In this document: positions 38,494 through 56,969 of the stretch, piece after piece
Layout of the letters: the number at the start of each line of letters is the position of its first letter
How positions within the stretch are numbered: position 1 is the first letter of the stretch
Notes under the pieces: model-generated
Database searches by the model: none
What the model saw: the letters and a program-made list of their open reading frames with translations, nothing else
Told to the model about the DNA's origin: nothing
Virus record (IMG/VR): IMGVR_UViG_3300031857_000010
Span: 1 to 64,000 of that record
DNA: 64,000 nucleotides
Reading direction: 5' to 3' (one strand)
Program-made: the position numbers and the translations under genes

Positions 38494-39456
38494 TTAATTA
38501 ATACAGGAAATAGATTTGTTTAAAATCGGTTTATACCATTTAAAAGTTTCTATTAAACCTTGTTCTAATTCATAGTCAGGCTCGAAGCCATATTTTTTTA
38601 TTTTTTCTATATCTGCATGAGTTTTTGAAACATCTCCTTCTCTTTTAGGTGCATTCAATACTATAGGATTAGTTCCAAGTAAATCAGACATAATTTCTTT
38701 TATTTGTATTAAATCATAAGTTTTGTCATTTGATACATTGAAAATATTTCCATTTAATTTATTATTATATTCACCCATAATAAAATTTGCTTTGCAAACA
38801 TCTTTAACAAATACAAAACTTCTTGACTGAGATCCATCACCATCTAATCTTATCTCTGAATTTGTTATGAAGCCTTTCATCCAAGCACATATCACATTTG
38901 CATAAGAATTTGTTGCATATTGATTCGGACCATACACATTAAAATATCGAAGACAAACACTATCTAGTTGATAAAGTTCAGACCATATTTTTAAATATTG
39001 TTCAATTATCAATTTTTGTACTGCATAAGGTGATTTAAAATTTATTGAAGTGGTTTCTGGAGTAGGTAAAAAAACTGTATCACCATATATAGCAGAAGTA
39101 GAGCTGAAAACAAATTTCTTAATTCTATTTTCAGAACAATTTTTTAATAATATTAAAGTTTTTGTAACATTATTATTATTAGTAATCAATGGATTTTCAA
39201 CTGAATAACCCACACTTGGCATAGCTGCAAAATGATAAACTATATCTATGTTTTTATTTGTAAAATCAAAATTTACAAAATCATCATTTATGAAAATGAA
39301 TTTTTCATTTACTAAATTTTCTATAAAACATTTATTCTCTTCCCCGTTTATAAAATTATCTATGCCATAAATAAAATATTCAGTGTTTTCAAGTAAAAAA
39401 TTTACCATGTTGGATCCTATAAAACCTCCTGCACCAGTGACTAAAACTCTTTTCAT
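38494..39456 (-). CDS. NAD-dependent epimerase (UDP-hexose/HexNAc 4-epimerase-like)
   Basis: VTGAGGFIGS, HFAAMPSV, FSSTSAIYG, SPYAVQK, LRYFNVYGP. Confidence 0.85.
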   Translation of the reverse strand: MKRVLVTGAGGFIGSNMVNFLLENTEYFIYGIDNFINGEENKCFIENLVNEKFIFINDDFVNFDFTNKNIDIVYHFAAMPSVGYSVENPLITNNNNVTKTLILLKNCSENRIKKFVFSSTSAIYGDTVFLPTPETTSINFKSPYAVQKLIIEQYLKIWSELYQLDSVCLRYFNVYGPNQYATNSYANVICAWMKGFITNSEIRLDGDGSQSRSFVFVKDVCKANFIMGEYNNKLNGNIFNVSNDKTYDLIQIKEIMSDLLGTNPIVLNAPKREGDVSKTHADIEKIKKYGFEPDYELEQGLIETFKWYKPILNKSISCIN

Positions 39457-40388
39457 TTTCTGATTTTATTTAAATTATTATAGAACCAATCTATTGTTTC
39501 CTTCAAACCATCCTCTATTCTGGTGAATTTATAATCTGGTAAATATTTTAATAACTTACTATTATCACTTGGTTTTCTGAGTTGACCATCTGGTTTTGAT
39601 TCATCCCAAATTATTTTATTTTTGAATCCCATTAAATCTGCTACCAATGTAGCTAGATCTTTTATTGAAATTTCTTGTGAAGTGGAGAGAATTATTGGTT
39701 CATTTTCTTCATAATTTTCTAAAACCCATAGCGATAAATCAGCTACATCTTTGGAGAATATAAATTCTCTTAGTGGTTTACCTGTTCCCCAAACTATCAA
39801 GTCTTTATTTTCTTTAATAGAATTATAGCATTTATAAATTAATGCTGGCAATACATGTGAATTCTCTAGATTAAAATTATCGTTTGGACCATAAATATTT
39901 GTAGGAATAACTGATTTATAATTTAATCCATATTGTTCTCTATAAGACCTAATTTGTATATCGGCCATTCTTTTAGCATAAGCATAAGGATAATTTGAAT
40001 CATGTGGTGGCCCTAAGTGTATTTTTTTTTCATTTAGAGGATATTCTATGTTATCTGGAAAAACACATGTAGATAAAAAACAAACTAAATTTTTTATGCC
40101 AAATTTTCTACTCGATTCTATAACATTTGTATTTATCATTATATTGTCATAGAAAAATTCTCCTTTTAAATTCATATTACTTCCTAATCCACCAACTTTT
40201 GCAGCACAATGTATAACTTTATCTACAGCAAATTCGTTTTGTATTTTTGAGTCAGTATAAAATTCAAATATTTGCTCTGTACTTTTTTTATCTCTCAAAT
40301 CACAAACCTTAGAAGATAATGCAATTAAATCTCCTTTAAATTGAGATCCAACTAAACCACTTTGACCAGTTACTAATAACCTTCCCAT
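39453..40388 (-). CDS. fcl: GDP-L-fucose synthase
   Basis: HCAAKVGG, FLSTCVFP, YAYAKR, PTNIYGPNDNF, SHVLPAL, WGTGKPLREF. Confidence 0.92.
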   Translation of the reverse strand: MGRLLVTGQSGLVGSQFKGDLIALSSKVCDLRDKKSTEQIFEFYTDSKIQNEFAVDKVIHCAAKVGGLGSNMNLKGEFFYDNIMINTNVIESSRKFGIKNLVCFLSTCVFPDNIEYPLNEKKIHLGPPHDSNYPYAYAKRMADIQIRSYREQYGLNYKSVIPTNIYGPNDNFNLENSHVLPALIYKCYNSIKENKDLIVWGTGKPLREFIFSKDVADLSLWVLENYEENEPIILSTSQEISIKDLATLVADLMGFKNKIIWDESKPDGQLRKPSDNSKLLKYLPDYKFTRIEDGLKETIDWFYNNLNKIRK

Positions 40389-40394
40389 AATTAT

Positions 40395-41039
40395 TTAATT
40401 AAAGTTTTTTTTCCAATTATTATCAAATAATTCTTTTTCTTCGTAAGTATTGAATCTAAATGGACTTTTATTATTGAAAAATAATACGTGGTTTTTTATT
40501 TCTTGAACTTTTGTAAAACCAAAACTTTCAAGGTAATCAAAATTAGTCCACTCGTCATTTATTTTATGTATTTCTATGACCATACAATGTATGTAAACAT
40601 CATCAAAATTTATTCCTTCTAACACTTCTTTCTCATAACCTTCAACATCAAGGCTAAAAAAATGTATTTCATTTATATTATGTTTCTTGAGTAAGAAATC
40701 TAAAGTTTTACAAGGAAACTTAGTAGGAGACCAATTAGATTTATTATGAATGTTTATTATGCCACCAGTCATAAAATCATCAAAATCACCTTCTATGAAA
40801 TCTTCTTTATGATTTTTACTAACTAAAACATAATTTTCTAAAATTGTTTTAGGTCTAAAATCTCTATATGTAGAATTCCAATAATCTTTTGGTTCTACAA
40901 CTAAACCAGACCAACCATTTTCTTCTAAAAAAGTAGTATTACATTGATCATAAGGATTAGATCCACCAGCTTCAAAAAATATTTTTTCTTTGCCAAAAAT
41001 ATTATATATTATTTTATCAATCTGATTTTGAGAAGACAT
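40395..41039 (-). CDS. FkbM-family methyltransferase
   Basis: FFEAGG, GWSGLVVEP, FSLDVEGYE. Confidence 0.75.
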   Translation of the reverse strand: MSSQNQIDKIIYNIFGKEKIFFEAGGSNPYDQCNTTFLEENGWSGLVVEPKDYWNSTYRDFRPKTILENYVLVSKNHKEDFIEGDFDDFMTGGIINIHNKSNWSPTKFPCKTLDFLLKKHNINEIHFFSLDVEGYEKEVLEGINFDDVYIHCMVIEIHKINDEWTNFDYLESFGFTKVQEIKNHVLFFNNKSPFRFNTYEEKELFDNNWKKNFN

Positions 41040-41040
41040 A

Positions 41041-42015
41041 TTAATTTTTATTTAACCAATACTCAATCATTTCATCAATCATACTATTAAAATTATATGA
41101 AGGGTTCCAATTTAATTCTTCTCTAATCTTAGTAGAATCCCCTCTTAAATAATTTAATTCTTCTGGTCTTTGATATTTTTCACTGGATTCAACATAAATT
41201 TCTTTTGATAAATTTAATTTATTAAAAACATAATCAACTAATTCTTGAACAGATCTACTTTCACCGGTTGCACAAACATAATCTTTTGCTTCATTGTTTT
41301 GTAGCATTAACCACATTGCTTGAACATAGTCTTTAGCATGTCCCCAATCTCTCTTTGCATTTAGATTTCCGAGTATTAATTTTTTAGACAATCCTTTATG
41401 AATCTTTACAGCTTCTGATACTACTTTATTTGTTACAAAATTTATACCTCTTCTTGGAGATTCGTGATTAAATAAAATCCCGGAGGTTATAAACATATTA
41501 TAAGAATTTCTATAGTTATTACATAAATTATGTGCAAATAATTTGCTACAACCATATGGACTAACTGGTTTCATTGGTGTAATTTCTCTTTGAAAAAAAT
41601 CTTGATCATAATTGTTGCCGAACATTTCAGAAGTTGCTGCGTGATAAATCTTTGAATCAGGTGAAAATTTTCTTACTGCTTCTAAAATAGATAGTGTACC
41701 ACCTGCATTAACGTCTAATGTATATTTTGGTAACTCAAAACTTATTTGAACATGTGATTGAGCTGCCAAATGATAAATCTCATCCGGTTTTAATTTATTT
41801 ACTATAGTTTCTATACTTATTGGATCTGTTAAGTCTGCGTAGTGTAACTGGATTAAATTATTTTTGTGTAAATGTTCAATTCTTGTTGTTTGTGATTCTG
41901 GCACTGAATTTCTTCTTATGGTTCCGTGAACACTGTAATCTTTTTCAATTAAAAATTCAGATAAATAACTTGCATCTTGACCATTTGCACCAATTATCAA
42001 AGCCGTTTTTTTCAT
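41041..42015 (-). CDS. gmd: GDP-mannose 4,6-dehydratase
   Basis: GANGQDASYL, YHLAAQSHV, YHAATSEMFG, SPYGCSK, LFNHESPRRG, GNLNAKRDWGHAKDY. Confidence 0.95.
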   Translation of the reverse strand: MKKTALIIGANGQDASYLSEFLIEKDYSVHGTIRRNSVPESQTTRIEHLHKNNLIQLHYADLTDPISIETIVNKLKPDEIYHLAAQSHVQISFELPKYTLDVNAGGTLSILEAVRKFSPDSKIYHAATSEMFGNNYDQDFFQREITPMKPVSPYGCSKLFAHNLCNNYRNSYNMFITSGILFNHESPRRGINFVTNKVVSEAVKIHKGLSKKLILGNLNAKRDWGHAKDYVQAMWLMLQNNEAKDYVCATGESRSVQELVDYVFNKLNLSKEIYVESSEKYQRPEELNYLRGDSTKIREELNWNPSYNFNSMIDEMIEYWLNKN

Positions 42016-42023
42016 TTATTTAA

Positions 42024-43157
42024 TTATTTATTTATTTTTTTATTGATCCAATCAAAAGTTTTTTCTAGTCCTTTTGTCAATGGTTCAGAAACTTTCCATC
42101 CAATTTTTTCAAAGAATAGAGTATTATCAGATTTTCTACCTCTCACGCCTTGAGGGCATTTATGACCATATTTTTTTAAAAATTCATCACCCCAAATATT
42201 ATTTATGTTTATTTTTTTTCCAGAAATTTTAATTACTATTTCTGCCATTTCATTTATAGTGATCATTTCTTCTGAACCTATATTGACAGGTCCTATAAAT
42301 TCTGAATTCATAAATTTTTCTATTGCTTCTAAACATTCATCAATATACAAAAATGATCTTGTTTGTAATCCATCACCCCAAATTTCGATACTACCACCAT
42401 TTTGAGTTTCTGCAACCTTCCTACAAATTGCTGCAGGGGCTTTTTCTTTGCCATTATTATATGAACCAAACGGGCCAAAAATATTGTGAAATCTTGCTAT
42501 TCTGACATTTAATCCATAGTTTCTATTGAAGGCTAGATATAATCTTTCACTAAATAATTTTTCCCAACCATATTCACTATCTGGGTTGGCTGGATATGCT
42601 GAATCTTCTACACAATTCGGATTTTCAGGATCATTTTGATTGTGCTCTGGATACATACAAGCAGATGAAGAATAAAAAATTTTCTTAACTTTTTTTACAA
42701 CACACTCGTGGGATACATTTAAATTTATTATTGCTGAATTAAGCATCACGTTGGCATCATTTTCTCCTGTAAAAATGTATCCAGCACCACCCATATCAGC
42801 CGCTAATTGATATAATTCATCTGTGTTTTCTAAAATTGACTTCTTTACTATTTCTGGATTTGTCAAATCTCCGACTATGAAATCATCTGCATGAGTATTT
42901 TCATATTCAGGATATTTGATATCAACAGCTCTAACCCAGAAACCTTTATTTTTTAATTTTTTAACTAAATGGCTACCAATGAAACCGCCTCCCCCAAGTA
43001 CAATTGCAATTTTTTTATTTTCTGGACTTTGAAAAGAAGTATTTCCTACAAATCTTTTTTCATTTGTATCTAAACATTTTTGAAAAAATGTAACCTCATC
43101 ATCTGTAATATAGATTGAGTTTTTGAATGTGTAATTTTCGAAATCGTAATATTTCAT
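42024..43157 (-). CDS. GDP-mannose 3,5-epimerase-like SDR
   Basis: GGGGFIGSHL, QLAADMGGAGYI, YSSSACMYP, YGWEKLFSE, RFHNIFGP, GKEKAPAA, QTRSFLYIDEC, GVRGRKSDN. Confidence 0.85.
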   Translation of the reverse strand: MKYYDFENYTFKNSIYITDDEVTFFQKCLDTNEKRFVGNTSFQSPENKKIAIVLGGGGFIGSHLVKKLKNKGFWVRAVDIKYPEYENTHADDFIVGDLTNPEIVKKSILENTDELYQLAADMGGAGYIFTGENDANVMLNSAIINLNVSHECVVKKVKKIFYSSSACMYPEHNQNDPENPNCVEDSAYPANPDSEYGWEKLFSERLYLAFNRNYGLNVRIARFHNIFGPFGSYNNGKEKAPAAICRKVAETQNGGSIEIWGDGLQTRSFLYIDECLEAIEKFMNSEFIGPVNIGSEEMITINEMAEIVIKISGKKININNIWGDEFLKKYGHKCPQGVRGRKSDNTLFFEKIGWKVSEPLTKGLEKTFDWINKKINK

Positions 43158-43221: not shown

Positions 43222-43977
43222 TCAGTTTATTTTACAAACTGGTATTGGTATCATTTTATGTAAATTCTTAGAATTTAAAAAATTATATATATTAATTATC
43301 TCCAATTGTCTTTCTGAATATTTTAATGGATCAATTGTATTGCTTTTACTTAATAATTCCATAGCCCACTCTAATTCTTCGTATGAAGCACCAATTTGTT
43401 GTTCATCTGTTCTGTCATCTGACCATAATCCATCTGTAGGAGCAGCTTCAATGATTTCTGAAATTATACCTAAATTTGATGCCATTTTTCTTACTTCAGT
43501 TTTAGTCAAATCTGCTATTGGGGAAATATCAACTCCACCATCACCATATTTTGTAAAGAATCCAATTCCAAAATCTTCTATTTTGTTGCCAGTTCCAACC
43601 ACAATTCCATTAACACTTGTTGCTATTTGATAAAGAGTAATCATTCTTAACCTTGAACGAGTGTTTGCAAAAGCTAGATTGTTATTATATTCATTTGCAA
43701 ATTTTTTTAAAAAAACATCATATATGTTAGTCAAATCATATTCTTTTTCAACAACATTGTTGTATTTATTTTTTAACCAATTAATATGCTTTCTTGCTCT
43801 TGTCAATTCAAGTTCATTTTGATAAATTGGCATTGAAACTAATATGGTTTCAATTTCAGTCATAGCACAAAGAGTTGAAACTAAAGCGGAGTCTATACCC
43901 CCAGAAACACCAACAACTAACTTAAATTTTTTTTCACTACAATAATTCTTAATCCAATCTACTATTTTTCTCTTCAT
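43222..43977 (-). CDS. nadE: NH3-dependent NAD+ synthetase
   Basis: VGVSGGIDS, NTRSRLRM, GTGNKIE, GFFTKYGDGG, PIADLTKTEV, APTDGLW. No glutaminase domain. Confidence 0.92.
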   Translation of the reverse strand: MKRKIVDWIKNYCSEKKFKLVVGVSGGIDSALVSTLCAMTEIETILVSMPIYQNELELTRARKHINWLKNKYNNVVEKEYDLTNIYDVFLKKFANEYNNNLAFANTRSRLRMITLYQIATSVNGIVVGTGNKIEDFGIGFFTKYGDGGVDISPIADLTKTEVRKMASNLGIISEIIEAAPTDGLWSDDRTDEQQIGASYEELEWAMELLSKSNTIDPLKYSERQLEIINIYNFLNSKNLHKMIPIPVCKIN

Positions 43978-45092
43978 GTGTGTAAAAATTTGTCTATGAA
44001 TACATTTATTTTTTCGAAATTATCTGAATTGAAATTATATGATATTGATTTTTTATTTTTTAATTCACAAACTTTTGAAACAAAAGTATTTTTATTTTGT
44101 TTGTCATCGAGTAAAACTAAATTTGTATTACAATAATATGATGCTAGATCGATTGGTGAAGTTGATGGGCTTATAAAAATTTCAGAATTATGAACCACAC
44201 TCAAAAATTTTTTTACATCGAAAAAATTTCTCATATCATATTCTATGATATAATCGTTTTCTGGAATTGGATATTTTACTAAATCGTTTATAATCACTAA
44301 AAATTTCTTTTCTGAAATAAATTTGTTCACAAGTTTATTATAGAAATCTAAATCTACAAAACCAAAACCCGGATTTCCTTTTGTTCCATCTCCAACTAAA
44401 ATTTCATTTATATTGGATGATCTAAAATTTCTACTTTTCCAAGTATTTTTTACAAATAAAGTACAATATTTCTTATCTAATTTTAAAACATCTTCAAATT
44501 CGTAATTATTTTTCCACAAATCTAAATTCCAACCTAAAGTTCCACTAGTTTTCCAAGCAGTATTTTCCGATGTATAATAATCTCTTTCCCCCGAAGCATA
44601 TTTATATGATTGTAGACTAAATAAGTTGTATTTCCAAGGCAAATCTCTTCCTATAGCATGAATTTTATTCTTAAATTTATATTTTGATAGAATTAAATCA
44701 TAATCATCCTCATTAAAATTTCTTATCGTATACCAAAAAGCAATACCTCTATCTCCTTGGTTCTGAAAATTATTAATTAATAAATCGGTTTCTTTATTAT
44801 TTTTATAAGCTTTATTTGTATCAATAAAACCTTCTAATATAATCAATTCATCTACCCAAGGTTCATAAAAAATTTCTTGACCCTCAAAACAAATTCCAAC
44901 TGTTGGCCCATTGATATTTTTGAAAAAATCTAAAAACAATTCATTGAAAAAAATAGGATAAAAACCATATTCACACCAAAAATAATTTATCAAATTATAT
45001 TGTTCCGTATTTCCAATTGAACTTAAATAAAGATCTAAATCTTTTAAATTGTTTATTTTTACTTTTTTAATTTTTTGCATTATTGATTTCAA
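43974..45092 (-). CDS. Hypothetical protein, possibly a GT-B glycosyltransferase
   Basis: 372 aa within the glycan operon. The C-terminal NSEIFISPSTSPIDLA loosely resembles GT9. Confidence 0.4.
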   Translation of the reverse strand: MKSIMQKIKKVKINNLKDLDLYLSSIGNTEQYNLINYFWCEYGFYPIFFNELFLDFFKNINGPTVGICFEGQEIFYEPWVDELIILEGFIDTNKAYKNNKETDLLINNFQNQGDRGIAFWYTIRNFNEDDYDLILSKYKFKNKIHAIGRDLPWKYNLFSLQSYKYASGERDYYTSENTAWKTSGTLGWNLDLWKNNYEFEDVLKLDKKYCTLFVKNTWKSRNFRSSNINEILVGDGTKGNPGFGFVDLDFYNKLVNKFISEKKFLVIINDLVKYPIPENDYIIEYDMRNFFDVKKFLSVVHNSEIFISPSTSPIDLASYYCNTNLVLLDDKQNKNTFVSKVCELKNKKSISYNFNSDNFEKINVFIDKFLHT

Positions 45093-49937: not shown

Positions 49938-49978
49938 ATATTATAAAATTTTTTTTGTAATATTAATTAATTAAACAA

Positions 49979-50800
49979 TTATAGTAAATATTTGTCTTGT
50001 ATAATTTTAGGATGTTCTCCTATAAATTTTATATTGTGACAACCAAATGGTTTATAATTTTTATCTTTATCAAATTTGTTCCATTCCTCTAAACATTTTT
50101 CGTTTTTATAAAAAGAAGCTTTGAATTTAACTTGATTTAATTCTACGTAACTATAATGATATAATTTGATTCCTAATGCGAGTGTTTGGTCTCTAGTAAG
50201 TACTTTTCCTGTATTGCATACTGTATTATCACATACATAGTTAGGTGGTTCATGCGATATCCAATATGATTTACCCGGTACATTTCTGAATATTCTCATC
50301 CATGGTATTTGATTTGCCCATTTACTGTCAGTTTCATTTATACAATAATCATAACCGCCAAAAAAATGATTTGCATAAAAATGCACAGCATCAATTTTCT
50401 TTTTCTCTAATATTAATAATAAAGACTCTATGTCTTCATGATGATAAAATTCATCTGAATCTAATTGCCAAATATAATCTCCGGTTGCAATTTTTGCATA
50501 TTCATTACACATTTGAGTTTTACCATCCCAAAACCCTTTGGATTCAATTAGTTTTATTTTATTTTGAGGATCAGGAAAAGATTTTATAATATCTAAAGTT
50601 CCATCATTTGATTTTCCATCATTTGTGAATTTACTTGTATCCCCATCAAAATAATGATTTACTGCTTTTGTAGCTCCCTCTACTATTATAATTTCGTGTG
50701 CAAAGTCATAAATATTTTTAATGCAATTGTATAACATACCGTCTGGTAAGTTTTTTTCTGCATTAAAAACTATCATTCCAAAAGTAATTTTTATGCTCAT
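49979..50800 (-). CDS. GT2 glycosyltransferase
   Basis: FGMIVFN, IIIVEG, SNDGT, WQLDSDE. Confidence 0.75.
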   Translation of the reverse strand: MSIKITFGMIVFNAEKNLPDGMLYNCIKNIYDFAHEIIIVEGATKAVNHYFDGDTSKFTNDGKSNDGTLDIIKSFPDPQNKIKLIESKGFWDGKTQMCNEYAKIATGDYIWQLDSDEFYHHEDIESLLLILEKKKIDAVHFYANHFFGGYDYCINETDSKWANQIPWMRIFRNVPGKSYWISHEPPNYVCDNTVCNTGKVLTRDQTLALGIKLYHYSYVELNQVKFKASFYKNEKCLEEWNKFDKDKNYKPFGCHNIKFIGEHPKIIQDKYLL

Positions 50801-51582
50801 AATTTTGATTCTATATCTTCTATTGTATAGTTTAATAATTCTTTATATGTAAACAAACATTTATCACTTTTAAGATAATATTCATTGTTTTTTTCATATT
50901 CATTGAATCTGTCAAAATTTTCTGTTATATAATTATCATATCTTAAATTAAAGTGATGATACAAATCTTTTATAAAATCATTGACAAAAATCATTCTGCC
51001 AGAACCTATGAGTTGATGCTTTTCCGCTATTAAAGAAGTTTTTACAACTAATTTAGGATGTATTATATCTCTATAAAAATATGTGTTTCCTATTTGTGTT
51101 GGTTGTTTATTGATAATTGAATTAAATATTTTACCAAATAAAAAATTTTCATTTCTATAAATCGAGTTGAAATTAAATGGAAACATTATTAAAACATTTC
51201 TATAAATTTCATTATTTTTTAAAATATAGTCAGTGATTTTAAATTTAGATGATAGATAACTAGTATTAAAGAATTTTATTTCTTTTTTCAAGTCTACGGG
51301 TCCTGAATATTGGTTCCATAATTCACATGTTGAATAAATTATTACTTTATTTGCCCTATCTTTAAAAAAATCTATAATTTTTAAAGTTAAAAAAAAATTA
51401 ATGTCATCATATGTATTTTTATCTTCTAAAAACTTTCTTGATTCCCCAAAACATAAAAAAACTTTATCATAATTTTCATTTAAAGAATTGTAATTTATAT
51501 TTCTAGATGAAATAAAATCGAAGTTTTCTTTTGGAAAATAATGTGATAATTGTGAAGTATTGCCAATAACTAAATTTCTCAT
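50797..51582 (-). CDS. Atypical NAD-dependent epimerase/dehydratase (SDR-like)
   Basis: LVIGNTSQL, YSTCE, YLSSK, YRDIIH. Confidence 0.5.
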   Translation of the reverse strand: MRNLVIGNTSQLSHYFPKENFDFISSRNINYNSLNENYDKVFLCFGESRKFLEDKNTYDDINFFLTLKIIDFFKDRANKVIIYSTCELWNQYSGPVDLKKEIKFFNTSYLSSKFKITDYILKNNEIYRNVLIMFPFNFNSIYRNENFLFGKIFNSIINKQPTQIGNTYFYRDIIHPKLVVKTSLIAEKHQLIGSGRMIFVNDFIKDLYHHFNLRYDNYITENFDRFNEYEKNNEYYLKSDKCLFTYKELLNYTIEDIESKL

Positions 51583-51586
51583 ACTC

Positions 51587-52654
51587 TTATTTATTGGATA
51601 ATCTATTTAATAGATCTTTCCATTTATCTAAAATAAGATTTTTTCTTTTTAAATTAAACTCTTCCATTTTATTACTGATTGAATCAAGATCTGTATTTTT
51701 TATTTTATATTTTAAATCGTCAAATGAATCAAAATAAGTTATGTATGGCATCCATTCTTGATTATAAAAATCAGACAACTCGATCCATCTTCTAATATTT
51801 TCAGTATTATTATAGTCATTTGGATCATCATTTTTTTTGTTATTAAACAAAATGGATCCGGAAGGCAAATTGAATACTTGATTCCAAGTTAATTCAGATA
51901 AAACACCATTGTTTTTATGTTCTTTAAACAGCTCTAACATAAAATTTATGCTAGGTACAAATAATGGTATATTTGCAGTATAATGTTCAAATATTGACAT
52001 TATAGAACAGTTATATGGTATCAGAACTATTCCTTTAAAGTTTGCTAAATCTTGCCAATCATATTTGCCTAAAAGTTTTTTATTAAAAAATTCAGAACCC
52101 AAATTTATATCTAATTTGCTCGAATAGAGGAATTTTTTATTTATGGGATCGTATTTGCTTTTAGTGTATTCACAAATATTTGGTATATAATTACAATCTT
52201 TTTCGACAAAATATTCAAAATATTTTTTATCATATAAAGAATTAGATACTGGAAAAATAATATTTTTATCTATATTTTTTCTTAGAAAGTTATTAAACTT
52301 AATCCAATTGTTTTGATTATTGTGAAAAGGAACTTCATATCTTATTGGAATTTGTATTATGATAGGTTTTTCAAATTTTTCAAATAACATTGAAAAAGAT
52401 GGTGGATATGTCAATACAAAACCATCATATTCACTTAATTCTTCTTTGTAAGTATTATAAAAATCATCTGCTAATTTTTGATCCAAATTCCACCAATTAT
52501 TTGAGTTAATAACTTCTATTTGATCGGGGTTTTTACCGAAAATCCAGTTGTGTCCAGAAATTGATTTACTATCAATTGAGTGTCCTAAATCTTCAAATAT
52601 TTTTTTTAAATCTGCTATAACAGATATGTGGCAGTCTAAATTGAAAAATTTCAT
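51587..52654 (-). CDS. Hypothetical GT-B-like protein
   Basis: 355 aa. KGIVLIPYNCSIMSIFEHYTANIPLFVP resembles a GT-B C-terminal lobe. Confidence 0.45.
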   Translation of the reverse strand: MKFFNLDCHISVIADLKKIFEDLGHSIDSKSISGHNWIFGKNPDQIEVINSNNWWNLDQKLADDFYNTYKEELSEYDGFVLTYPPSFSMLFEKFEKPIIIQIPIRYEVPFHNNQNNWIKFNNFLRKNIDKNIIFPVSNSLYDKKYFEYFVEKDCNYIPNICEYTKSKYDPINKKFLYSSKLDINLGSEFFNKKLLGKYDWQDLANFKGIVLIPYNCSIMSIFEHYTANIPLFVPSINFMLELFKEHKNNGVLSELTWNQVFNLPSGSILFNNKKNDDPNDYNNTENIRRWIELSDFYNQEWMPYITYFDSFDDLKYKIKNTDLDSISNKMEEFNLKRKNLILDKWKDLLNRLSNK

Positions 52655-53340
52655 AATTGATTTGTTTGTTTTAAATAATTCTTTAGCAATTCAGTGTGTT
52701 CGGGTACATTGTTGTTTTTTTCATCAAATACTTCTCCAACAAATTCTAATTCTTTCCTTGGTGTAGGAAAAGGAAGATTGCATGGAAAATTAAATATTTC
52801 ATCGTGACATATATGACTTTTAAAATATTTTCTATATAAATCAGTCAAAAAAATTTGATCATCCATGTACTTGAAATCTGGTTTTATTTCTAAGAATTTA
52901 ATTATTGCATCCTTCATATTAAAATCAAATGAGTTCAATAATCCCCATGTTCCTCCTAAAATTTGAATTCCATGACTTGGATGATCTCTCATTATATGTA
53001 ATTTTTTATCTGTTTCTATCCATTCGTCTACAGCATATTTTTCTCTGAAGTTTAGTCTTGAATCAGTGTCTCTAACAATAAATCTTTCAACACTTTTATC
53101 ATCATATACTAGAAATCTCCAAAACATTCCATGATTGTCCATTCCTGAATTTGTCATATCTACAAGTTCAATCTTTAAATCTCTTAACTCGTCAATATAT
53201 TTTTCTGGAACTGAATTGTCATAATATATTCGACAGATCCAATCTGGATATATAAGTGGTTGCAATTTGACATTTTCGATTGCCCCAATACAATATTTCG
53301 GATTTTCTCCGTACAAACTGAAACTTATAATTTTTTTCAT
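52651..53340 (-). CDS. Nucleotide-diphospho-sugar transferase-like protein
   Basis: ISFSLYG, MFWRF, VRDTDSR, HIMRDHP, ILGGTWG, DQIFL. Start placed at MKKII (53340). Confidence 0.55.
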   Translation of the reverse strand: MKKIISFSLYGENPKYCIGAIENVKLQPLIYPDWICRIYYDNSVPEKYIDELRDLKIELVDMTNSGMDNHGMFWRFLVYDDKSVERFIVRDTDSRLNFREKYAVDEWIETDKKLHIMRDHPSHGIQILGGTWGLLNSFDFNMKDAIIKFLEIKPDFKYMDDQIFLTDLYRKYFKSHICHDEIFNFPCNLPFPTPRKELEFVGEVFDEKNNNVPEHTELLKNYLKQTNQL

Positions 53341-53341
53341 T

Positions 53342-54172
53342 TTACCAATAGCAGCCACCCTCTACCATTTTAAATTTTTCTGGAATTTCTATATCAAAAG
53401 GTCTTCTCCAATGTTCATTATAGAATTTATTGATATTTTTATTTTCGTCCCATCTTTTTCCTTTTATTCCAAATAATATTTGAGTCGCACCACCAACATA
53501 AATTCCAGATTTTTTCATTTCATTTTTTATGAAATTTAATAATGGTAGCCCATATGAACCACAACCAAGTAAGGCTATATCGAAATTTAATTCTGAAATT
53601 TCTTTCTTCATTATTTCGAGAGATTCTTTCCAGCTTGAATGAGGCCCTTCAGCACCAACAGATTGTACTGAAGTATAATTTATAAGATTAAATTTAGGTA
53701 ACATTTTTCCATCTGGCCAAATTTTTTCTCTTTTTTTATATTGATATCTTATTGATTGACTAAATGGATTTATAATTAATACATTCTTACCTTCTAGTTC
53801 TTGACTCCATGGATCATCAAAGTAATAAGGCTCAACTATTTTGAATCCTACTTTTGTTGAATTAGGAGAAAGTTTTTCGAATATTTTATGTTGTATATTA
53901 TCTATCATACTTCCATTCCATACCACTTGTAGATCTCCACAAGCTATTCCCTTTGAGTATTCTTCGAAAAAATCTTCTATTTTACCCCCATAAAATCCTG
54001 CTTGAATTGAAAGATAATATAATTGTTCATCTGTCACTTTTAAACCAGATAAAATTTGATTAGTCACAATTGTTTCAAAACCTGTTGCTATTCTCGAAAC
54101 TGCAAAAAGTTTATTGTTCTTAATATTTTGTTTAATTATTTCGTTCCCTTCTATTTCAGTTATCATGATCAA
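53342..54172 (-). CDS. GT-D/DUF1792-like protein
   Basis: KNVLIINPF, FDIALLGCGSYGLPL, IYVGG. Confidence 0.5.
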   Translation of the reverse strand: MIMITEIEGNEIIKQNIKNNKLFAVSRIATGFETIVTNQILSGLKVTDEQLYYLSIQAGFYGGKIEDFFEEYSKGIACGDLQVVWNGSMIDNIQHKIFEKLSPNSTKVGFKIVEPYYFDDPWSQELEGKNVLIINPFSQSIRYQYKKREKIWPDGKMLPKFNLINYTSVQSVGAEGPHSSWKESLEIMKKEISELNFDIALLGCGSYGLPLLNFIKNEMKKSGIYVGGATQILFGIKGKRWDENKNINKFYNEHWRRPFDIEIPEKFKMVEGGCYW

Positions 54173-54792
54173 ATTATTTTTTTATTAATACAAAAGCATT
54201 GATATGGTTTTTGACTATCGTAACTTACTTTTTTCATATTTTCTAAATCAATACAAGTTAATTCATATTTTTTTATAATTAAATCTTTTATAATGTCCCA
54301 ATCTTGTTGTAAATGACATTCAACCAAGATATATTTTGTTTTATAGATTATTTTTTCTAATCCCTCAAGAACAAATTTTTCTGCTCCTTCAACATCAATT
54401 TTAATTAGTTTAATAGATTCTTCATTCGAAAAAAAAGTATCGAGCCTTATTGATTCAACTTTTCCAGCTATTGGGTTTTCTACAAAATTCATGTCATGTC
54501 CAATTATATTATTTGTCCACGCATCTTTGCCTTTATAATAATTTATGATAGAATTTTCATTAGACACTGCTTTATTGTGTATGATTACATTTTGATTATT
54601 TTCAAATCTATTCAATAAAACTTTTGTTGTATCAGGGTCTAATTCAAAAGAATAAATTTTTCCTGTATTTTCTAGATTTTTCAAAAAAAATTCAGTGTAA
54701 TCTCCATAATTAGCACCTACATCAATTATAATATCACCTTTTTCGATGAATGATTTTAGAAATTCAAAATTTCTTATGTCGTTGTGGTCCAT
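54169..54792 (-). CDS. FkbM-family methyltransferase
   Basis: IDVGANYG, YSFE, AVS, IKIDVEGAE. Confidence 0.88.
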   Translation of the reverse strand: MDHNDIRNFEFLKSFIEKGDIIIDVGANYGDYTEFFLKNLENTGKIYSFELDPDTTKVLLNRFENNQNVIIHNKAVSNENSIINYYKGKDAWTNNIIGHDMNFVENPIAGKVESIRLDTFFSNEESIKLIKIDVEGAEKFVLEGLEKIIYKTKYILVECHLQQDWDIIKDLIIKKYELTCIDLENMKKVSYDSQKPYQCFCINKKII

Positions 54793-55454
54793 TGTATAAA
54801 AAAATTTTCTTTTTTTCTTTTTTCGTAATTTAATTTATCAATATTGTTAAATGAATCATTTTTAATTTGTAGTGGATCCCATATTTCGCCTAACCAAACT
54901 GGATGTTCGTGCTTAATAATAACATGAGGTATATATTTTACTTTTTTCAGAATTTTGGATATATCTGTAAATTCAGTATCACACCAAAGAGATATATAGG
55001 TTGGGTTGTAGATGTAATTAAATCTTTTATAATATTTTTTCCCTAAAATACAAAGTGTATTAAGATTGTTTCCTTGATATCCGTCATTGAACCAAAGAAC
55101 ACCGTCAGTATCTGGAAAAAACTTGTTAAAGCTTTGTCTAATTATTGTATCATATCCTTTTTCTTGAGGTATCATATCATCTGAAGCTAGTAGAATAATG
55201 TCATAATCCTCATCATTCATATCAGCATTAATAGCTTCAACTTTATTTTTGTTATTCCCAAAGAAAAATTCTAAATTTTTATACTCTTTAAATTTATTAA
55301 TAACATTGTCACAATTCATGGATAAATCATCAGAATCACAACTTATTATGAAACGGGTTTTTGACAATTCATCTAGCAATTCATAATATTTATCTAAAAC
55401 TGAAAAAAACTTATCCGGTCTTGATCTTGTTGGAAATTTAATTAATAAATTCAT
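54774..55454 (-). CDS. GT-A glycosyltransferase
   Basis: FPTRSRP, AINAD, LASDDM, WCDTEF, HEHP. Confidence 0.65.
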   Translation of the reverse strand: MNLLIKFPTRSRPDKFFSVLDKYYELLDELSKTRFIISCDSDDLSMNCDNVINKFKEYKNLEFFFGNNKNKVEAINADMNDEDYDIILLASDDMIPQEKGYDTIIRQSFNKFFPDTDGVLWFNDGYQGNNLNTLCILGKKYYKRFNYIYNPTYISLWCDTEFTDISKILKKVKYIPHVIIKHEHPVWLGEIWDPLQIKNDSFNNIDKLNYEKRKKENFFIQWTTTT

Positions 55455-56142
55455 TAGTTATTTTTGATTCTATAATAAATTTAGTTCTGTCTATTTTTAG
55501 ACTATTATAATCAAAATTAATAATTTCTTCCTTATTTTCAAAAATAACTTCTATTATTTTATTTTTATTGAAACATGACATGATATTTTTAGGATAATTA
55601 TCAAAGATTTGTAAGTTATTCTCCAGTTCTAGTGGGTTTTCAAAATTTATATTTTTTATAAATTTTAATAATTCTTTGCCTCTATATACTGTTCCGTCTA
55701 AATTTAATGGATAACCAAAATCCATATAGTGAACCGACCAATCCCAGTATAATAAATTGTTTTTTTCTTCTATAGGTTTAAAAATATTGTCACAATTCAT
55801 ATTTGAACAAAAAGTAATATTTTTCCCTAAGGATAAACTAAAACAAAAAACTTCATCATTTTTTAGACAATTATCAATTTCCTCTATACGAAATTCATCG
55901 TAACATAGTTTATTTTCATCAAGGATCATATAATTGATACTTGTATTTTCATTAATTTCTGAAATTAAATCATTCTTTAAATTATTGGTTTTTATTATTT
56001 TACATCCCAATATTTCAGTATATAATTTATTGTTTTGATCAAAAATTACAATTTGATTATCACCAATCGCTTTTTGATTTAAACTTTTAATTAGAATGTT
56101 TAAATTCTCTTTATTTTTATTAAAAAAAATTATAGTTTTCAT
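55438..56142 (-). CDS. Hypothetical GT-A-like protein
   Basis: MILDE, FSLSLG, DFGYPLNLDG, NPLELE. Confidence 0.45.
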   Translation of the reverse strand: MKTIIFFNKNKENLNILIKSLNQKAIGDNQIVIFDQNNKLYTEILGCKIIKTNNLKNDLISEINENTSINYMILDENKLCYDEFRIEEIDNCLKNDEVFCFSLSLGKNITFCSNMNCDNIFKPIEEKNNLLYWDWSVHYMDFGYPLNLDGTVYRGKELLKFIKNINFENPLELENNLQIFDNYPKNIMSCFNKNKIIEVIFENKEEIINFDYNSLKIDRTKFIIESKITNEFIN

Positions 56143-56969
56143 GCTTTTAATTGTTTTTTATTTTGAATTATTTCTAAAGTATCATAATAAAGATCGGAAT
56201 TAATTTTTTCCGAATTTAAAGGATTGTCAATATTATAAAAATACATTACATCGCTTATGTGAAATGTTTTTTCAAATCCTGCCAAATCAGCCAAAGGATA
56301 AAATAATGCATAGTTAGAACAGGTTGAAAACCATTCACCTTTATCATCAGTAAAATATTCGAATTTCGGGTCTAATTGACAAAATTTATCATAAAGTGAT
56401 TTTCTAAAAGTAATTGGATGGGAAAATTTAGGTGTTATTCTTCTTAATATAGGAAATTCTTTTTCTTGATAAGTGGTAGAATAGCATTTTTTACCATCTG
56501 TCAATTTAGAAGATCCATAAGTCATCAAACAATCTTTTTCATTATAGATTTCATTTATTTTTTTTAGAACGTTTTTATTTGATAACCAGTCGTCACCATA
56601 TAAAATAAAAATAATATCATCAGGATCCGTCGAAGCATTTATAATAGCATTGTGAATATTCGGTAGAGCAGTAAGTCTTCTACTTGATTTCCAAGCATTT
56701 ACCTTTAAACATTTGGTTATTTCTAGTATGGGATGAATTTCGGTGATTATTAATTCTCCTTTTTCATCCCTGACAGGTTCATTTTTATCATCTGTCTGGT
56801 AAATACAAGCAGGTATTTTATTATAGCTATCGTCATTTGAAAAATCGTCTATAAATAAAACTTCATAATTATCATAATCTTGAGTCAGTACTGAATTAAC
56901 ACACATGTCAAAATAATCTCCGGGATTATGCAAGGGAATGATGACCTTAATTTTGTTATTTTTTATCAT
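56139..56969 (-). CDS. GT2 glycosyltransferase
   Basis: VIIPLHNP, SVLTQDY, FIDDFSND, LYGDDWL. Confidence 0.8.
   Translation of the reverse strand: MIKNNKIKVIIPLHNPGDYFDMCVNSVLTQDYDNYEVLFIDDFSNDDSYNKIPACIYQTDDKNEPVRDEKGELIITEIHPILEITKCLKVNAWKSSRRLTALPNIHNAIINASTDPDDIIFILYGDDWLSNKNVLKKINEIYNEKDCLMTYGSSKLTDGKKCYSTTYQEKEFPILRRITPKFSHPITFRKSLYDKFCQLDPKFEYFTDDKGEWFSTCSNYALFYPLADLAGFEKTFHISDVMYFYNIDNPLNSEKINSDLYYDTLEIIQNKKQLKA

What the first reader, a model, noticed from the sequence alone, without database searches (positions are those of the whole stretch)
38494..56969. 22-gene, 18.5-kb co-oriented glycan biosynthesis island in a phage
Seen: nucleotide-sugar enzymes, about ten GT-like genes, five methyltransferases and nadE, mostly overlapping or abutting. 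No flippase, polymerase, ABC exporter or polyprenyl-phosphate priming transferase was recognised, and the GT-like proteins look soluble. With the 5-14.5 kb cassette, the two GTs at 33-35 kb and the GT at 61.7 kb, about half the window is glyco-related. Inference: the product is built in the cytoplasm on a phage substrate (virion protein or DNA) rather than exported like O-antigen or capsule.
Basis: partly seen in the sequence, partly recalled or inferred. Interest (0 to 1): 0.72.

Follow-up and report, generated by a model that had tools for sequence, protein, structure and literature searches.

The report
Large sugar-coat gene island in phage
A large uncultured freshwater phage carries a real 22-gene block for making and methylating an unusual sugar chain from GDP-mannose. 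It has no genes to export the chain, similar blocks are already known in ocean cyanophages, and what the chain is attached to remains unproven.

Summary
Window 38494-56969 contains 22 co-oriented minus-strand ORFs with 11 overlaps and a largest gap of 64 nt. They encode six nucleotide-sugar enzymes, NadE, five methyltransferase-like proteins and ten GT-like proteins. Eight of the GT-like proteins are supported and two are unresolved.

New here:
- 42024-43157 is a GDP-mannose 3,5-epimerase.
- 47626-48489 has a fucosyltransferase fold.
- 50797-51582 is a short SDR, not a GT.
- Every identifiable sugar route starts from GDP-mannose.

The element is a T4-like jumbo phage: 216.7 kb held, about 83% complete, probably with a Bacteroidota host, and present in lake metagenomes from 2017 to 2025. 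The held genome has no protein with five or more hydrophobic segments. It also has no Wzx, ABC-2 permease, ABC ATPase, priming transferase, integrase or thymidylate-synthase-like hydroxymethylase.

Soluble GTs also act on host lipid-linked intermediates, and this phage encodes outer-membrane proteins.

The same design, including homologous Gmd, Fcl and GME, is published for the cyanomyovirus S-SCSM1, so this is a new member of a known kind.

My best reading is cytoplasmic glycosylation of virion proteins (confidence 0.4). Host-envelope remodelling is the main rival (0.3).

The parts
56139..56969 (-). GT2-family glycosyltransferase (GT-A); first gene of the island
   Evidence: PF00535 E 1.6e-9, 38.4 bits, above cut-off; N-terminal part only
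55438..56142 (-). GT-A-fold glycosyltransferase of a family not in Pfam
   Evidence: AlphaFold2 pLDDT 90.9 from a 36-sequence alignment. Foldseek PDB hits CgT, SpsA and TarP, E 2e-7. 1162 representatives, including domains in proteins of up to 2915 aa
54774..55454 (-). Probable GT-A glycosyltransferase
   Evidence: phrog_14945 'glycosyltransferase' E 4e-23; DSDD and SDD motifs
54169..54792 (-). FkbM-family methyltransferase
   Evidence: PF05050 E 1.9e-17, 64.4 bits
53342..54172 (-). Unresolved, weakly GT-D-like
   Evidence: PF22882 19.6 bits, under the 27 cut-off. Profile against PDB found nothing. Homologues in L013 (40%) and in a GVMAG contig, L038 (38%)
52651..53358 (-). GT-A-fold glycosyltransferase of a virus-specific family
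   Evidence: Atlas model pLDDT 0.88. TM 0.85 to viral GT2-domain proteins and 0.80-0.84 to bacterial proteins with a GT-A domain fused to TPR repeats
51587..52654 (-). GT-B-fold (GT4-like) glycosyltransferase of a virus-specific family
   Evidence: Atlas model pLDDT 0.85. TM 0.63-0.66 to GT1/GT4 families; nearest clusters are 84-100% viral
50797..51582 (-). Short SDR, nucleoside-diphosphate-sugar epimerase/reductase-like; not a GT
   Evidence: 721 homologues, some carrying PF01370/PF16363, named NDP-sugar epimerase by JGI. Paired with the 51587 homologue in L013
49979..50800 (-). GT2-family glycosyltransferase
   Evidence: PF00535 E 5.4e-12, 46.4 bits
49314..49937 (-). Probable class-I SAM methyltransferase; orphan
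   Evidence: Motifs VDIGTWNGLGT and VLILDGGEF. Only weak PCMT and fibrillarin hints. No relative outside the same phage
48492..49307 (-). Unknown, possibly GT-A-like
   Evidence: 9 homologues. Invariant NADxIL..DF and HQDH motifs. No Pfam, PHROG or PDB match
47626..48489 (-). Fucosyltransferase-superfamily glycosyltransferase; probably uses a GDP-sugar donor
   Evidence: AlphaFold2 pLDDT 86. All 50 top PDB hits are NodZ, POFUT1/2, FUT8 or AtFUT1 (E 1.4e-7). Best viral hits are cyanophage S-SRM01 and S-SCSM1 fucosyltransferases and giant-virus FucTs. Invariant LG.H.R.P.HY motif
46499..47596 (-). Short NDP-sugar 6-dehydrogenase (UDP-glucose / GDP-mannose dehydrogenase family)
   Evidence: TIGR03026 220.6 bits, above the 189.8 cut-off. 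PDB 3gg2 142 bits, AlgD 1mfz 127 bits. Lacks most of the C-terminal domain and has no PF03720
45808..46527 (-). SAM methyltransferase (RrnaAD / Methyltransf_24-like)
   Evidence: PF00398 31.1 bits, above the 24 cut-off
45067..45798 (-). FkbM-like methyltransferase (weak)
   Evidence: PF05050 20.6 bits, under the 22.7 cut-off. 56% homologue in L018 and L019
43974..45092 (-). GT-B-fold, GT9-like glycosyltransferase of a virus-specific family
   Evidence: Atlas TM 0.53-0.55 to GT9 families; nearest clusters are 100% viral. The likely true start is 4 codons in
43222..43977 (-). NadE, NH3-dependent NAD(+) synthetase family
   Evidence: TIGR00552 175 bits, above the 63.65 cut-off. Best PDB hit 3fiu (Francisella NadE), E 2.8e-30. 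SGGIDS and downstream family motifs kept
42024..43157 (-). GDP-mannose 3,5-epimerase (makes GDP-L-galactose / GDP-L-gulose)
   Evidence: phmmer against Arabidopsis GME 2c59: E 7e-84, 285 bits. Catalytic Cys, YxxxK and Lys are aligned and conserved. 53-59% identity to cyanomyovirus genes
41041..42015 (-). GDP-mannose 4,6-dehydratase (Gmd)
   Evidence: PF16363 E 7.8e-113. TIGR01472 383.7 bits (cut-off 415). 49% identity to S-SCSM1 Gmd
40395..41039 (-). FkbM-family methyltransferase
   Evidence: PF05050 E 2.8e-13, 50.8 bits
39453..40388 (-). GDP-L-fucose synthase-like 4-keto-6-deoxy-mannose epimerase/reductase
   Evidence: NF047922 247.9 bits (cut-off 500). 35% identity to S-SCSM1 Fcl
38494..39456 (-). 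GalE/TviC-like NDP-sugar 4-epimerase; last gene of the 22
   Evidence: PF01370 E 5e-49. TIGR01179 169.6 bits and TviC 162.8 bits, both under cut-off
36326..38431 (-). Two more co-oriented genes (556 aa with a weak metallophosphoesterase domain; 142 aa) lying before the first terminator-like hairpin; possibly in the same transcript
   Evidence: PF00149 23.4 bits. No PDB match. Position relative to the hairpin
36279..36306 (-). Terminator-like hairpin (11-bp stem plus T-run) in the first intergenic gap downstream of the island
   Evidence: Consensus scan only
57028..57035 (-). TATAAATA motif 59 nt upstream of the first island gene; a lead only
   Evidence: Also found 29 nt upstream of gp25, but absent upstream of most structural genes
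5034..14557 (-). Second glyco cassette
   Evidence: GT2+GT9 fusion, unknown 493 aa, RmlD-like reductase, Methyltransf_24, PseB/FnlA-like UDP-GlcNAc 4,6-dehydratase, and a 1121-aa GT1+FkbM fusion
2..2251 (+). Collagen-like fibre protein, open at the contig end; candidate glycan acceptor (inference)
   Evidence: PF01391 E 4e-34. At least 59 plus 27 Gly-X-Y triplets, with 81% Ser/Thr at X and Y in the C-terminal 27-triplet tract and no Pro

Best explanation
The island, together with the 5-14.5 kb cassette and the scattered GT1 genes, is a phage-encoded cytoplasmic glycosylation system.

Proposed route:
- It draws host GDP-mannose. The phage has no sugar nucleotidyltransferase.
- Gmd plus the Fcl-like enzyme give GDP-L-fucose or a related 6-deoxyhexose.
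- GME gives GDP-L-galactose or GDP-L-gulose.
- The short 6-dehydrogenase, possibly with the GalE/TviC-like epimerase, gives a nucleotide-hexuronic acid.
- The second cassette supplies a 6-deoxy-HexNAc.
- About ten soluble GT-A, GT-B and fucosyltransferase-type enzymes assemble these sugars.
- FkbM-type and other methyltransferases O-methylate the product.
- NadE most simply supplies NAD+ for the NAD-dependent steps.

I infer that the acceptor is one or more virion proteins, made and assembled in the same compartment. The Ser/Thr-only collagen-like fibre proteins are candidates in this phage. The result would be a glycan coat, as on giant-virus fibrils or mycobacteriophage capsids.

Shown: gene content, enzyme families and folds, absence of export and priming genes, conservation, and purifying selection. 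Inferred: the sugars, the order of steps, and above all the acceptor.
For: - Enzyme assignments.
- No NTP_transferase.
- No multi-pass membrane protein apart from a PrsW protease and one Pfam-less protein with four predicted segments. No Wzx, ABC-2 permease or Bac_transf, and no ABC ATPase above cut-off.
- No integrase, so the phage is probably virulent, which reduces the value of lysogenic conversion.
- No hydroxymethylase for DNA glycosylation.
- The Pfam-less GT families have nearest clusters that are 84-100% viral. They are therefore long-resident phage genes, not recent host O-antigen captures.
- GT-methyltransferase fusion proteins are present, as in giant viruses.
- All glyco genes sit in the 64 kb that also holds baseplate and fibre genes.
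- Ser/Thr-only Gly-X-Y tracts occur in two large proteins.
- The locus is anchored and variable across relatives.
- It is near-identical in lake metagenomes from 2017 to 2025, with 9 synonymous and 6 nonsynonymous SNPs.
Against: - There is no direct evidence for any acceptor.
- Soluble GTs are equally expected for enzymes that act on host undecaprenyl-linked intermediates.
- The phage encodes outer-membrane proteins.
- In relatives the locus lies between dUTPase and PhoH, a metabolic rather than structural neighbourhood.
- The Ser/Thr collagen-like tracts occur in only 2 of 9 related records, whereas FkbM genes occur in 7 of 9. One FkbM-positive record that is 79% complete lacks the tracts. 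These fibres therefore cannot be the lineage-wide acceptor.
- The TATAAATA motif is not a general late promoter here.
- 17% of the genome is unseen.
- The hydropathy scan is crude.
Confidence: 0.4

Rival explanations
1. Host-envelope remodelling. The phage GTs extend or replace host lipid-linked O-antigen, capsule or general O-glycan precursors at the inner face of the membrane. The host's own priming enzyme, flippase, polymerase and ligase do the rest. The altered cell surface would block superinfection, grazing or recognition during a long infection.
For: - Non-priming GTs of bacterial glycan clusters are soluble or peripheral too (general knowledge).
- The phage encodes OmpA-like and TonB-receptor-like outer-membrane proteins.
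- The homologous cyanophage islands are interpreted this way in the literature (PMC9602691, PMC12801897, PMC11662467).
- In relatives the locus sits among metabolic genes (dUTPase, PhoH).
Against: - No priming, flipping, polymerising or ligating gene, and no integrase.
- The GT families are overwhelmingly viral rather than host-like.
- None of the published interpretations has been tested.
- About 30 kb is a large investment for a transient change to a cell that will lyse (inference).
Confidence: 0.3
2. Glycosylation of other cytoplasmic targets, or a metabolic role. Targets could be host or phage non-structural proteins, for example to disable defence or translation factors. Alternatively the enzymes divert the host GDP-mannose and UDP-sugar pools, or make a soluble glycoconjugate.
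For: - The cytoplasmic location is as in the best explanation.
- NAD-linked sugar enzymes plus NadE are discussed as phage metabolic modules (PMC11662467).
- The dehydrogenase-NadE-GME core is conserved even in relatives with few GTs.
Against: Ten GTs and five methyltransferases imply a defined, elaborate oligo- or polysaccharide rather than pool diversion. Inactivating modifications are usually single sugars (general knowledge).
Confidence: 0.15
3. DNA hypermodification. The GTs decorate modified bases in phage DNA to evade restriction, as in T4 and other phages with glycosylated hydroxymethyl-pyrimidines.
For: - Phage GTs are known to build glycans on DNA (cited in PMC12619734 as Pyle et al. 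2024).
- A short PurA/PurZ-like gene hints that the DNA may be non-canonical.
Against: - No thymidylate-synthase-family hydroxymethylase in the held genome.
- No T4-type GT or TET/JBP hit, though the controls for those two searches were silent.
- GDP-deoxyhexose, uronic-acid and O-methyl chemistry with about ten GTs far exceeds known DNA glycans (general knowledge).
- Illumina assemblies from many samples recover the region cleanly.
Confidence: 0.05

Closest known systems
GDP-mannose/fucose glycan islands of T4-like cyanomyoviruses (S-SCSM1 ORF117-135; also S-SCSM2R, P-SSM2, S-SSM7, P-TIM68)
   Same: - Both lie in T4-like myoviruses.
- Both are co-oriented blocks of about 15-18 kb.
- Both have adjacent Gmd, Fcl and GME; these are 49%, 35% and 54% identical to the genes here.
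- Both have fucosyltransferase-fold GTs, several further GTs and methyltransferases, and an ATP-dependent amide-forming enzyme.
- Neither has export genes (PMC9602691).
   Different: - The GTs share no BLAST-level similarity.
- The amide-forming enzyme is asparagine synthase in S-SCSM1 and NadE here.
- This island adds a 6-dehydrogenase, FkbM methyltransferases and a GalE/TviC-like epimerase. It lacks the 2OG oxygenases, carbamoyltransferase and mannose-6-phosphate isomerase.
- The host is probably Bacteroidota in fresh water, not marine cyanobacteria.
- The function of the cyanophage islands is itself untested.
Giant-virus glycosylation clusters (Mimivirus/Megavirus fibril glycans, chlorovirus capsid glycans)
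   Same: - The virus encodes its own routes to rare sugars: GDP-mannose-derived deoxyhexoses, a 6-deoxy-HexNAc route via a PseB/FnlA-like dehydratase, and a sugar dehydrogenase.
- The GTs are soluble, and GT-methyltransferase fusions are present.
- Collagen-like proteins are encoded nearby.
- Giant-virus proteins are among the structural neighbours of the fucosyltransferase-like and GT-A proteins. The giant-virus biology is from general knowledge.
   Different: This is a tailed phage with a prokaryotic host. No glycan has been observed. Sequence similarity is remote.
Mycobacteriophage virion O-glycosylation (Freeman et al. 2023, as cited in PMC12619734 and PMC12801897)
   Same: Phage-encoded soluble GTs act in the cytoplasm on capsid and tail-tube subunits. 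This is the only demonstrated case of a glycan coat on a tailed-phage virion.
   Different: That system has only a few genes, no nucleotide-sugar pathway of this size, and different GT families. The paper itself could not be read here.
Bacterial O-antigen / capsule gene clusters
   Same: Nucleotide-sugar genes, GTs and modifying enzymes sit in one co-oriented block. Content is hypervariable between relatives around conserved anchor genes.
   Different: No priming transferase, flippase, polymerase, chain-length regulator or ABC exporter anywhere in the held genome.
'Moraphages', freshwater jumbo phages of Bacteroidota (PMC12619734)
   Same: - Genome size of 200-307 kb and a freshwater source.
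- gp6, PhoH, Clp ATPase and DnaJ are present.
- Four glycosyltransferase groups are listed among that lineage's core orthologous groups (shared by 80% or more of genomes).
   Different: No DnaK here. No sequence comparison with the published genomes was possible, so membership is unproven.

Membership tests
Wzx/Wzy- or ABC-transporter-dependent O-antigen/capsule cluster | Polyprenyl-phosphate priming transferase (WbaP/PglC or WecA type) | tested here: not met
   PF02397 has no hit in G000, and the control rang in 10 genomes. There is no protein with 10-11 hydrophobic segments that could be WecA-type.
Wzx/Wzy- or ABC-transporter-dependent O-antigen/capsule cluster | Flippase and polymerase, or an ABC-2 exporter | tested here: not met
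   PF01943 and PF01061 have no hit. ABC_tran hits are only below cut-off. No protein has five or more predicted membrane segments. Caveat: the record is 83% complete.
Wzx/Wzy- or ABC-transporter-dependent O-antigen/capsule cluster | Nucleotide-sugar genes plus several GTs in one co-oriented block | tested here: met
Cyanomyovirus-type GDP-mannose glycan island (S-SCSM1 ORF117-135) | Resides in a T4-like myovirus genome | tested here: met
   gp25, a gp6-like baseplate wedge with cyanophage and Flavobacterium-phage hits, and PhoH.
Cyanomyovirus-type GDP-mannose glycan island (S-SCSM1 ORF117-135) | Linked Gmd, Fcl and GDP-mannose 3,5-epimerase homologous to the cyanophage genes | tested here: met
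   49%, 35% and 54% identity to S-SCSM1 ORF121-123. GME has hits in 40 phage records, nearly all cyanomyoviruses.
Cyanomyovirus-type GDP-mannose glycan island (S-SCSM1 ORF117-135) | Fucosyltransferase-superfamily GT plus further GTs and methyltransferases, co-oriented | tested here: met
   Fold of 47626-48489; its best viral matches include S-SRM01 and S-SCSM1 fucosyltransferases. Annotation of S-SCSM1.
Virion protein glycosylation system (mycobacteriophage or giant-virus type) | Glycan covalently attached to virion proteins | not testable with these tools
   Needs virions. The phage is uncultured.
Virion protein glycosylation system (mycobacteriophage or giant-virus type) | Candidate acceptor co-occurs with the glyco genes across relatives | tested here: not met
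   Ser/Thr Gly-X-Y tracts occur in 2 of 9 related records and FkbM in 7 of 9. G005 (79% complete) has FkbM but no tract. This tests only the collagen-like candidates, and most records are fragments.
Phage DNA glycosylation (T4-type) | dCMP or dUMP hydroxymethylase of the thymidylate-synthase family | tested here: not met
   PF00303 has no hit, and the control rang in 10 genomes.
Phage DNA glycosylation (T4-type) | T4 beta-glucosyltransferase family or TET/JBP oxygenase | tested here: inconclusive
   PF09198 and PF12851 have no hit, but nothing rang in the controls either.
GDP-mannose 3,5-epimerase (GME) | Full-length similarity to a characterised GME with the catalytic Cys, Tyr-x-x-x-Lys and Lys conserved | tested here: met
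   2c59: E 7e-84 over query residues 43-377. SSAC, YG.EK and EKAPAA segments are aligned and conserved. The residue roles (Cys145, Tyr174, Lys178, Lys217 of the Arabidopsis enzyme) are recalled from the literature, not tested.
NH3-dependent NAD+ synthetase (NadE) | Score above the equivalog-domain cut-off, with the PP-loop and C-terminal family motifs | tested here: met
   TIGR00552 175 bits, above 63.65. SGGIDS, GDG..D..P and TDE..G motifs align to 3fiu and 2e18. It is below the cut-offs of the full-length models NF010587 and NF001979.
NH3-dependent NAD+ synthetase (NadE) | Other NAD-pathway genes present (supportive, not defining) | tested here: not met
   No PF01467 (NadD/NMNAT) and no PF04095 (NAPRT/NAMPT) in G000. 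NadE lies beside the sugar dehydrogenase in most relatives.

The most novel reading that the evidence does not exclude
The conserved dehydrogenase-NadE-GME core may be a three-step pathway. In it, a NadE-family enzyme has been recruited to amidate a nucleotide-hexuronic acid, chemistry that parallels nicotinate adenine dinucleotide to NAD. The product, a GDP-L-hexuronamide-type donor, would go into a methylated glycan coat on the virion of a tailed phage. That coat would be the phage counterpart of giant-virus glycosylated fibrils.
Probability: 0.1. Interest if true: 0.78.

Novelty: new member of a known kind. Interest (0 to 1): 0.5.

Why it matters
Large glycan gene blocks have been noted in T4-like cyanophages for about two decades. 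They are routinely labelled 'LPS' or 'cell-wall' genes, but nobody has shown what they glycosylate.

This island shows that the same GDP-mannose core (Gmd, Fcl, GME, a fucosyltransferase-fold GT) also sits in a distant freshwater jumbo-phage lineage that probably infects Bacteroidota. Here it is surrounded by virus-specific GT families, and there is no export machinery anywhere in the held genome. That widens the question from cyanophage auxiliary metabolism to a general phage trait.

It also offers concrete things to test:
- GME, the dehydrogenase and NadE can all be assayed as soluble enzymes.
- Two Ser/Thr-only collagen-like proteins are candidate acceptors.
- The phage recurs in lake metagenomes from 2017 to 2025.

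If virions are the target, tailed phages would join giant viruses in building their own complex glycan coats. That would matter for adsorption, grazing, particle stability and recognition.

Tried and rejected
- Megablast of 11.5 kb of the island against GenBank phages found nothing. tblastn of the GT-B protein (51587) and the 1117-aa protein (21646) against phages also found nothing.
- PHROGs matched only one of ten Pfam-less island proteins. A loose Pfam scan (E up to 10) gave only noise.
- PDB sequence or profile searches for 51587, 43974, 48492 (A2), 55438 (A3), 53342 (A4) and 36761 were uninformative.
- hhalign of A2 against A3 was not significant.
- Pfam on 36 members of the 55438 family gave no family.
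- TATAAATA as a T4-type late promoter: it is present before the island and before gp25, but there are only 15 intergenic copies and none before most structural genes. I dropped it to a lead.
- Collagen-like Ser/Thr fibres as a lineage-wide acceptor: co-occurrence is not supported.
- NadE as part of a phage NAD pathway: no NadD/NMNAT or NAPRT was found. In some relatives NadE lies next to ClpB, not NAD genes.
- NadE as an obviously divergent enzyme: rejected, because the family motifs are intact.
- Moraphage membership: DnaK is absent, so it remains unproven.
- Rfam, including the wcaG motif annotated in S-SCSM1, gave no hit in the window.
- No metatranscriptome holds the island.
- Strain-level block replacement in 51200-57150: only SNPs were seen, and the reported joints have short sides and are probably spurious.
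- Freeman et al. 2023 could not be read.
- Complex prediction was not used. An enzyme paired with a low-complexity acceptor would not give an interpretable verdict.

Full report
**What the element is.** The window is the first 64 kb of a 216,699-bp IMG/VR virus record. The record is linear, and CheckV estimates it as 83% complete. GC content is 28.6%.
- It encodes a gp25 baseplate protein and a gp6-like baseplate wedge protein. The best cultured matches of the latter are Flavobacterium phage 'immuto' and T4-like cyanophages at 22-27% identity. It also encodes PhoH.
- Elsewhere the genome carries a split ClpB, DnaJ, an OmpA-like protein and a SusC/TonB-receptor-like N-terminus.
DnaK is absent, and I could not compare sequences, so membership is unproven.
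- No tyrosine integrase was found.
- The island region occurs, with 78-100% of its sampled 31-mers, in at least 20 lake or freshwater metagenome runs from 2017 to 2025.

**The observation.** Exactly 22 minus-strand ORFs fill 38494-56969. Eleven junctions overlap and ten are gaps of 1-64 nt.

- Six are nucleotide-sugar enzymes.
- One is NadE (TIGR00552 175 bits against a cut-off of 63.65).
- Five are methyltransferase-like: two FkbM and one RrnaAD-like above cut-off, one weak FkbM, and one recognised only by SAM-binding motifs.
- Ten are GT-like.

Only two GTs are visible to Pfam and one to PHROGs. The rest needed structure:
- 51587 and 43974 are GT-B (GT4-like and GT9-like), and 52651 is GT-A, all from ESM Atlas models.
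- 55438 is GT-A (AlphaFold2 pLDDT 91; Foldseek hits CgT, SpsA, TarP).
- 47626 has the fucosyltransferase fold. All 50 top PDB matches are NodZ, POFUT1/2, FUT8 or plant FUT1. The best viral matches are cyanophage and giant-virus fucosyltransferases.
- 50797, which has no Pfam hit, is a short NDP-sugar epimerase-like SDR with 721 homologues, not a GT.
- 53342 (weakly GT-D-like) and 48492 (DxD-like motif) remain unresolved.

**The sugar chemistry.** The most informative new assignment is 42024-43157. It matches Arabidopsis GDP-mannose 3,5-epimerase at E 7e-84, with the catalytic Cys, Tyr-x-x-x-Lys and Lys aligned. With Gmd (41041), the Fcl-like reductase (39453) and the fucosyltransferase-fold GT, every identifiable route starts from GDP-mannose. 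These routes lead to L-fucose-type deoxyhexoses and to L-galactose or L-gulose.
- The 365-aa dehydrogenase (46499) passes the NDP-sugar dehydrogenase subfamily cut-off. It resembles UDP-glucose dehydrogenases and GDP-mannose dehydrogenase about equally, and it lacks most of the C-terminal nucleotide-sugar-binding domain. Its substrate is therefore open.
- The 5-14.5 kb cassette adds a PseB/FnlA-like UDP-GlcNAc 4,6-dehydratase and an RmlD-like reductase, a route to a 6-deoxy-HexNAc. It also has GT2+GT9 and GT1+FkbM fusion proteins.
- The genome has no sugar nucleotidyltransferase, so the activated precursors must come from the host.

**Export, priming and DNA routes.** A Kyte-Doolittle scan of all 288 ORFs finds no protein with five or more hydrophobic segments. 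The two four-segment proteins are a PrsW protease and a Pfam-less ORF far from the island.
- Family searches of the whole record find no Wzx, ABC-2 permease or Bac_transf, and no ABC ATPase above cut-off. The positive controls rang in each case.
- No thymidylate-synthase-family hydroxymethylase is present.
- Searches for T4 beta-glucosyltransferase and TET/JBP were negative, but their controls were silent.
- All Pfam GT1 and GT2 hits lie in the first 64 kb.

**Relatives.** NadE homologues (46-65% identity) retrieve 20 further IMG/VR loci. In at least 14 of them the short dehydrogenase lies beside or within 3 kb of NadE. In eight, the GME homologue (61-72% identity, the best-conserved gene) completes a triad.
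- The usual order is dUTPase, dehydrogenase-NadE, a variable stretch, GME (with or without Gmd-Fcl), PhoH, and then homologues of 35569, 34327 (GT1), 33426 and 32496.
- The locus is thus a conserved anchor with variable content.
- Relatives differ widely in FkbM and epimerase counts.
- One relative (L013) has its own run of about 20 co-oriented genes, of which only 5-7 are shared with this island.
- Within the species the upstream third of the island is stable. A 22.5-kb contig from a 2024 sample spans 51200-57150 with 15 substitutions, 9 synonymous and 6 nonsynonymous. Contig pieces from a 2017 sample are identical over the parts they cover.

**Comparison with what is known.** GME homologues at 53-59% identity occur in 40 GenBank phage records, nearly all T4-like cyanomyoviruses. 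In the isolate S-SCSM1, ORF117-135 form a ~15.5-kb co-oriented island. It contains Gmd, Fcl, GME, three fucosyltransferase-type genes, five further GTs, two methyltransferases and an asparagine synthase (PMC9602691).
- Only Gmd, Fcl and GME are similar to the present genes at BLAST level.
- S-SCSM2R is reported to have 13 GTs among 22 'cell-wall' genes, 'possibly the highest number in a marine phage' (PMC12801897).
- These papers read such genes as host cell-surface modification or DNA protection, without tests.
- The design is therefore known and this island is a new member, in a different lineage and habitat. Its particular features are the dehydrogenase-NadE-GME core, the FkbM enzymes and the set of virus-specific GT families.

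**What it most likely does.** The shown facts establish a cytoplasmic, soluble, multi-sugar, methylating assembly line with no means of its own to prime on lipid or to export. I favour virion proteins as the acceptor (0.4), for these reasons:
- The Pfam-less GT families are overwhelmingly viral.
- The nearest cellular neighbours of one GT-A are TPR-fused, protein-directed-looking enzymes.
- The phage appears virulent.
- The glyco genes are interleaved with baseplate and fibre genes.
- Two large proteins carry proline-free Gly-X-Y tracts whose X and Y positions are over 80% Ser/Thr. This recalls heavily O-glycosylated collagen-like fibres such as BclA (general knowledge).

Against this reading:
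- Those tracts occur in only 2 of 9 related records, whereas FkbM genes occur in 7 of 9.
- The locus sits in a metabolic neighbourhood in relatives.
- Nothing observed here bears directly on the acceptor.

Host-envelope remodelling through host lipid carriers and exporters remains a serious rival (0.3), strengthened by the phage's own outer-membrane proteins. DNA is unlikely (0.05).

**NadE.** It keeps all family motifs, and its best structural relative is the short Francisella enzyme. The parsimonious reading is an NAD+ (or NMN) synthetase that supports the NAD-dependent sugar enzymes, as proposed for other jumbo phages (PMC11662467). Three things are unusual:
- It is the only NAD-pathway gene in the held genome.
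- It is persistently linked to the dehydrogenase and GME through several rearrangements.
- An amide-forming enzyme of another family sits in the S-SCSM1 island.

A recruited uronate amidotransferase is therefore not excluded, and I put it at about 0.1.

**Verdict.** The system is a new member of a known but functionally unsolved class of phage glycan islands. Interest is moderate (0.5). It is a useful handle on an old open question, but the phage is uncultured and nothing here identifies the acceptor.

Noticed in passing
G000 132643-133641 (-), outside the window (L005:8643-9641): A 332-aa short adenylosuccinate-synthetase homologue (PF00709 E 2e-82), the length of phage PurZ. tblastn hits include the PurZ-carrying Vibrio, Arthrobacter and Acinetobacter phages, but also host-like PurA at 35-40% identity. 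A metallophosphoesterase lies next door. It is not resolved whether the DNA contains 2-aminoadenine.
   Followed up: partly
G000 106890-110643 (+) (L004:2890-6643): A ClpB-like chaperone is split into a D1 gene and a D2 gene by a 365-aa Pfam-less ORF (108282-109379). The two halves are contiguous in relative L013. A full DnaJ follows at 110684-111802.
   Followed up: partly
G000 130048-131193 (-) and 144251-146716 (-): The phage encodes outer-membrane proteins: an OmpA-like beta-barrel with an OmpA domain, and an 821-aa protein with the CarboxypepD_reg and Plug domains of SusC/TonB-dependent receptors. These point to a Bacteroidota host and to envelope remodelling.
   Followed up: no
window 2257-5037 (+): Three tandem paralogues (300, 312 and 304 aa; 30-36% identical; 23-25% Ser+Thr) lie directly after the collagen-like fibre gene and converge on the first glyco cassette. 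No family hit.
   Followed up: no
window 2-2251 (+) and G000 77457-84485 (-): Proline-free collagen-like tracts made almost only of Gly-Ser-Ser and Gly-Thr-Ser triplets. The first ORF runs off the contig start, so the repeat may have broken the assembly.
   Followed up: partly
L038 (IMGVR_UViG_GVMAG-M-3300023179-123_000001) 153-9027: A 38% homologue of the GT-D-like protein 53342-54172 sits in a contig binned as a giant-virus MAG (GC 26.8%), directly upstream of an ORF of more than 2645 aa. Either the GT family is shared with giant viruses or a phage contig was mis-binned.
   Followed up: no
L013 (IMGVR_UViG_3300032294_002964) 7-18792: A related huge-phage fragment (CheckV 13% complete at 92 kb) has its own run of about 20 tightly packed co-oriented genes with four FkbM genes. 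Only 5-7 of them are homologous to this island.
   Followed up: partly
window 57457-58101 (+): A 214-aa protein that is 30% glutamate, in the divergent unit just upstream of the island. No family hit.
   Followed up: no
G000 93456-94295 (+): Two adjacent 134-aa genes that are 97% identical (a recent tandem duplication).
   Followed up: no
window 1944-2032 (+): ARAGORN calls an 89-nt tRNA-Arg(tct) inside the collagen-like ORF. Probably a false positive.
   Followed up: no
window 57028-57035 (-) and 26502-26509 (+): TATAAATA, the T4 late-promoter consensus, lies 59 nt upstream of the first island gene and 29 nt upstream of gp25. Fifteen of the 67 genome copies are intergenic although only 6% of the genome is. 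Most structural genes lack it.
   Followed up: partly
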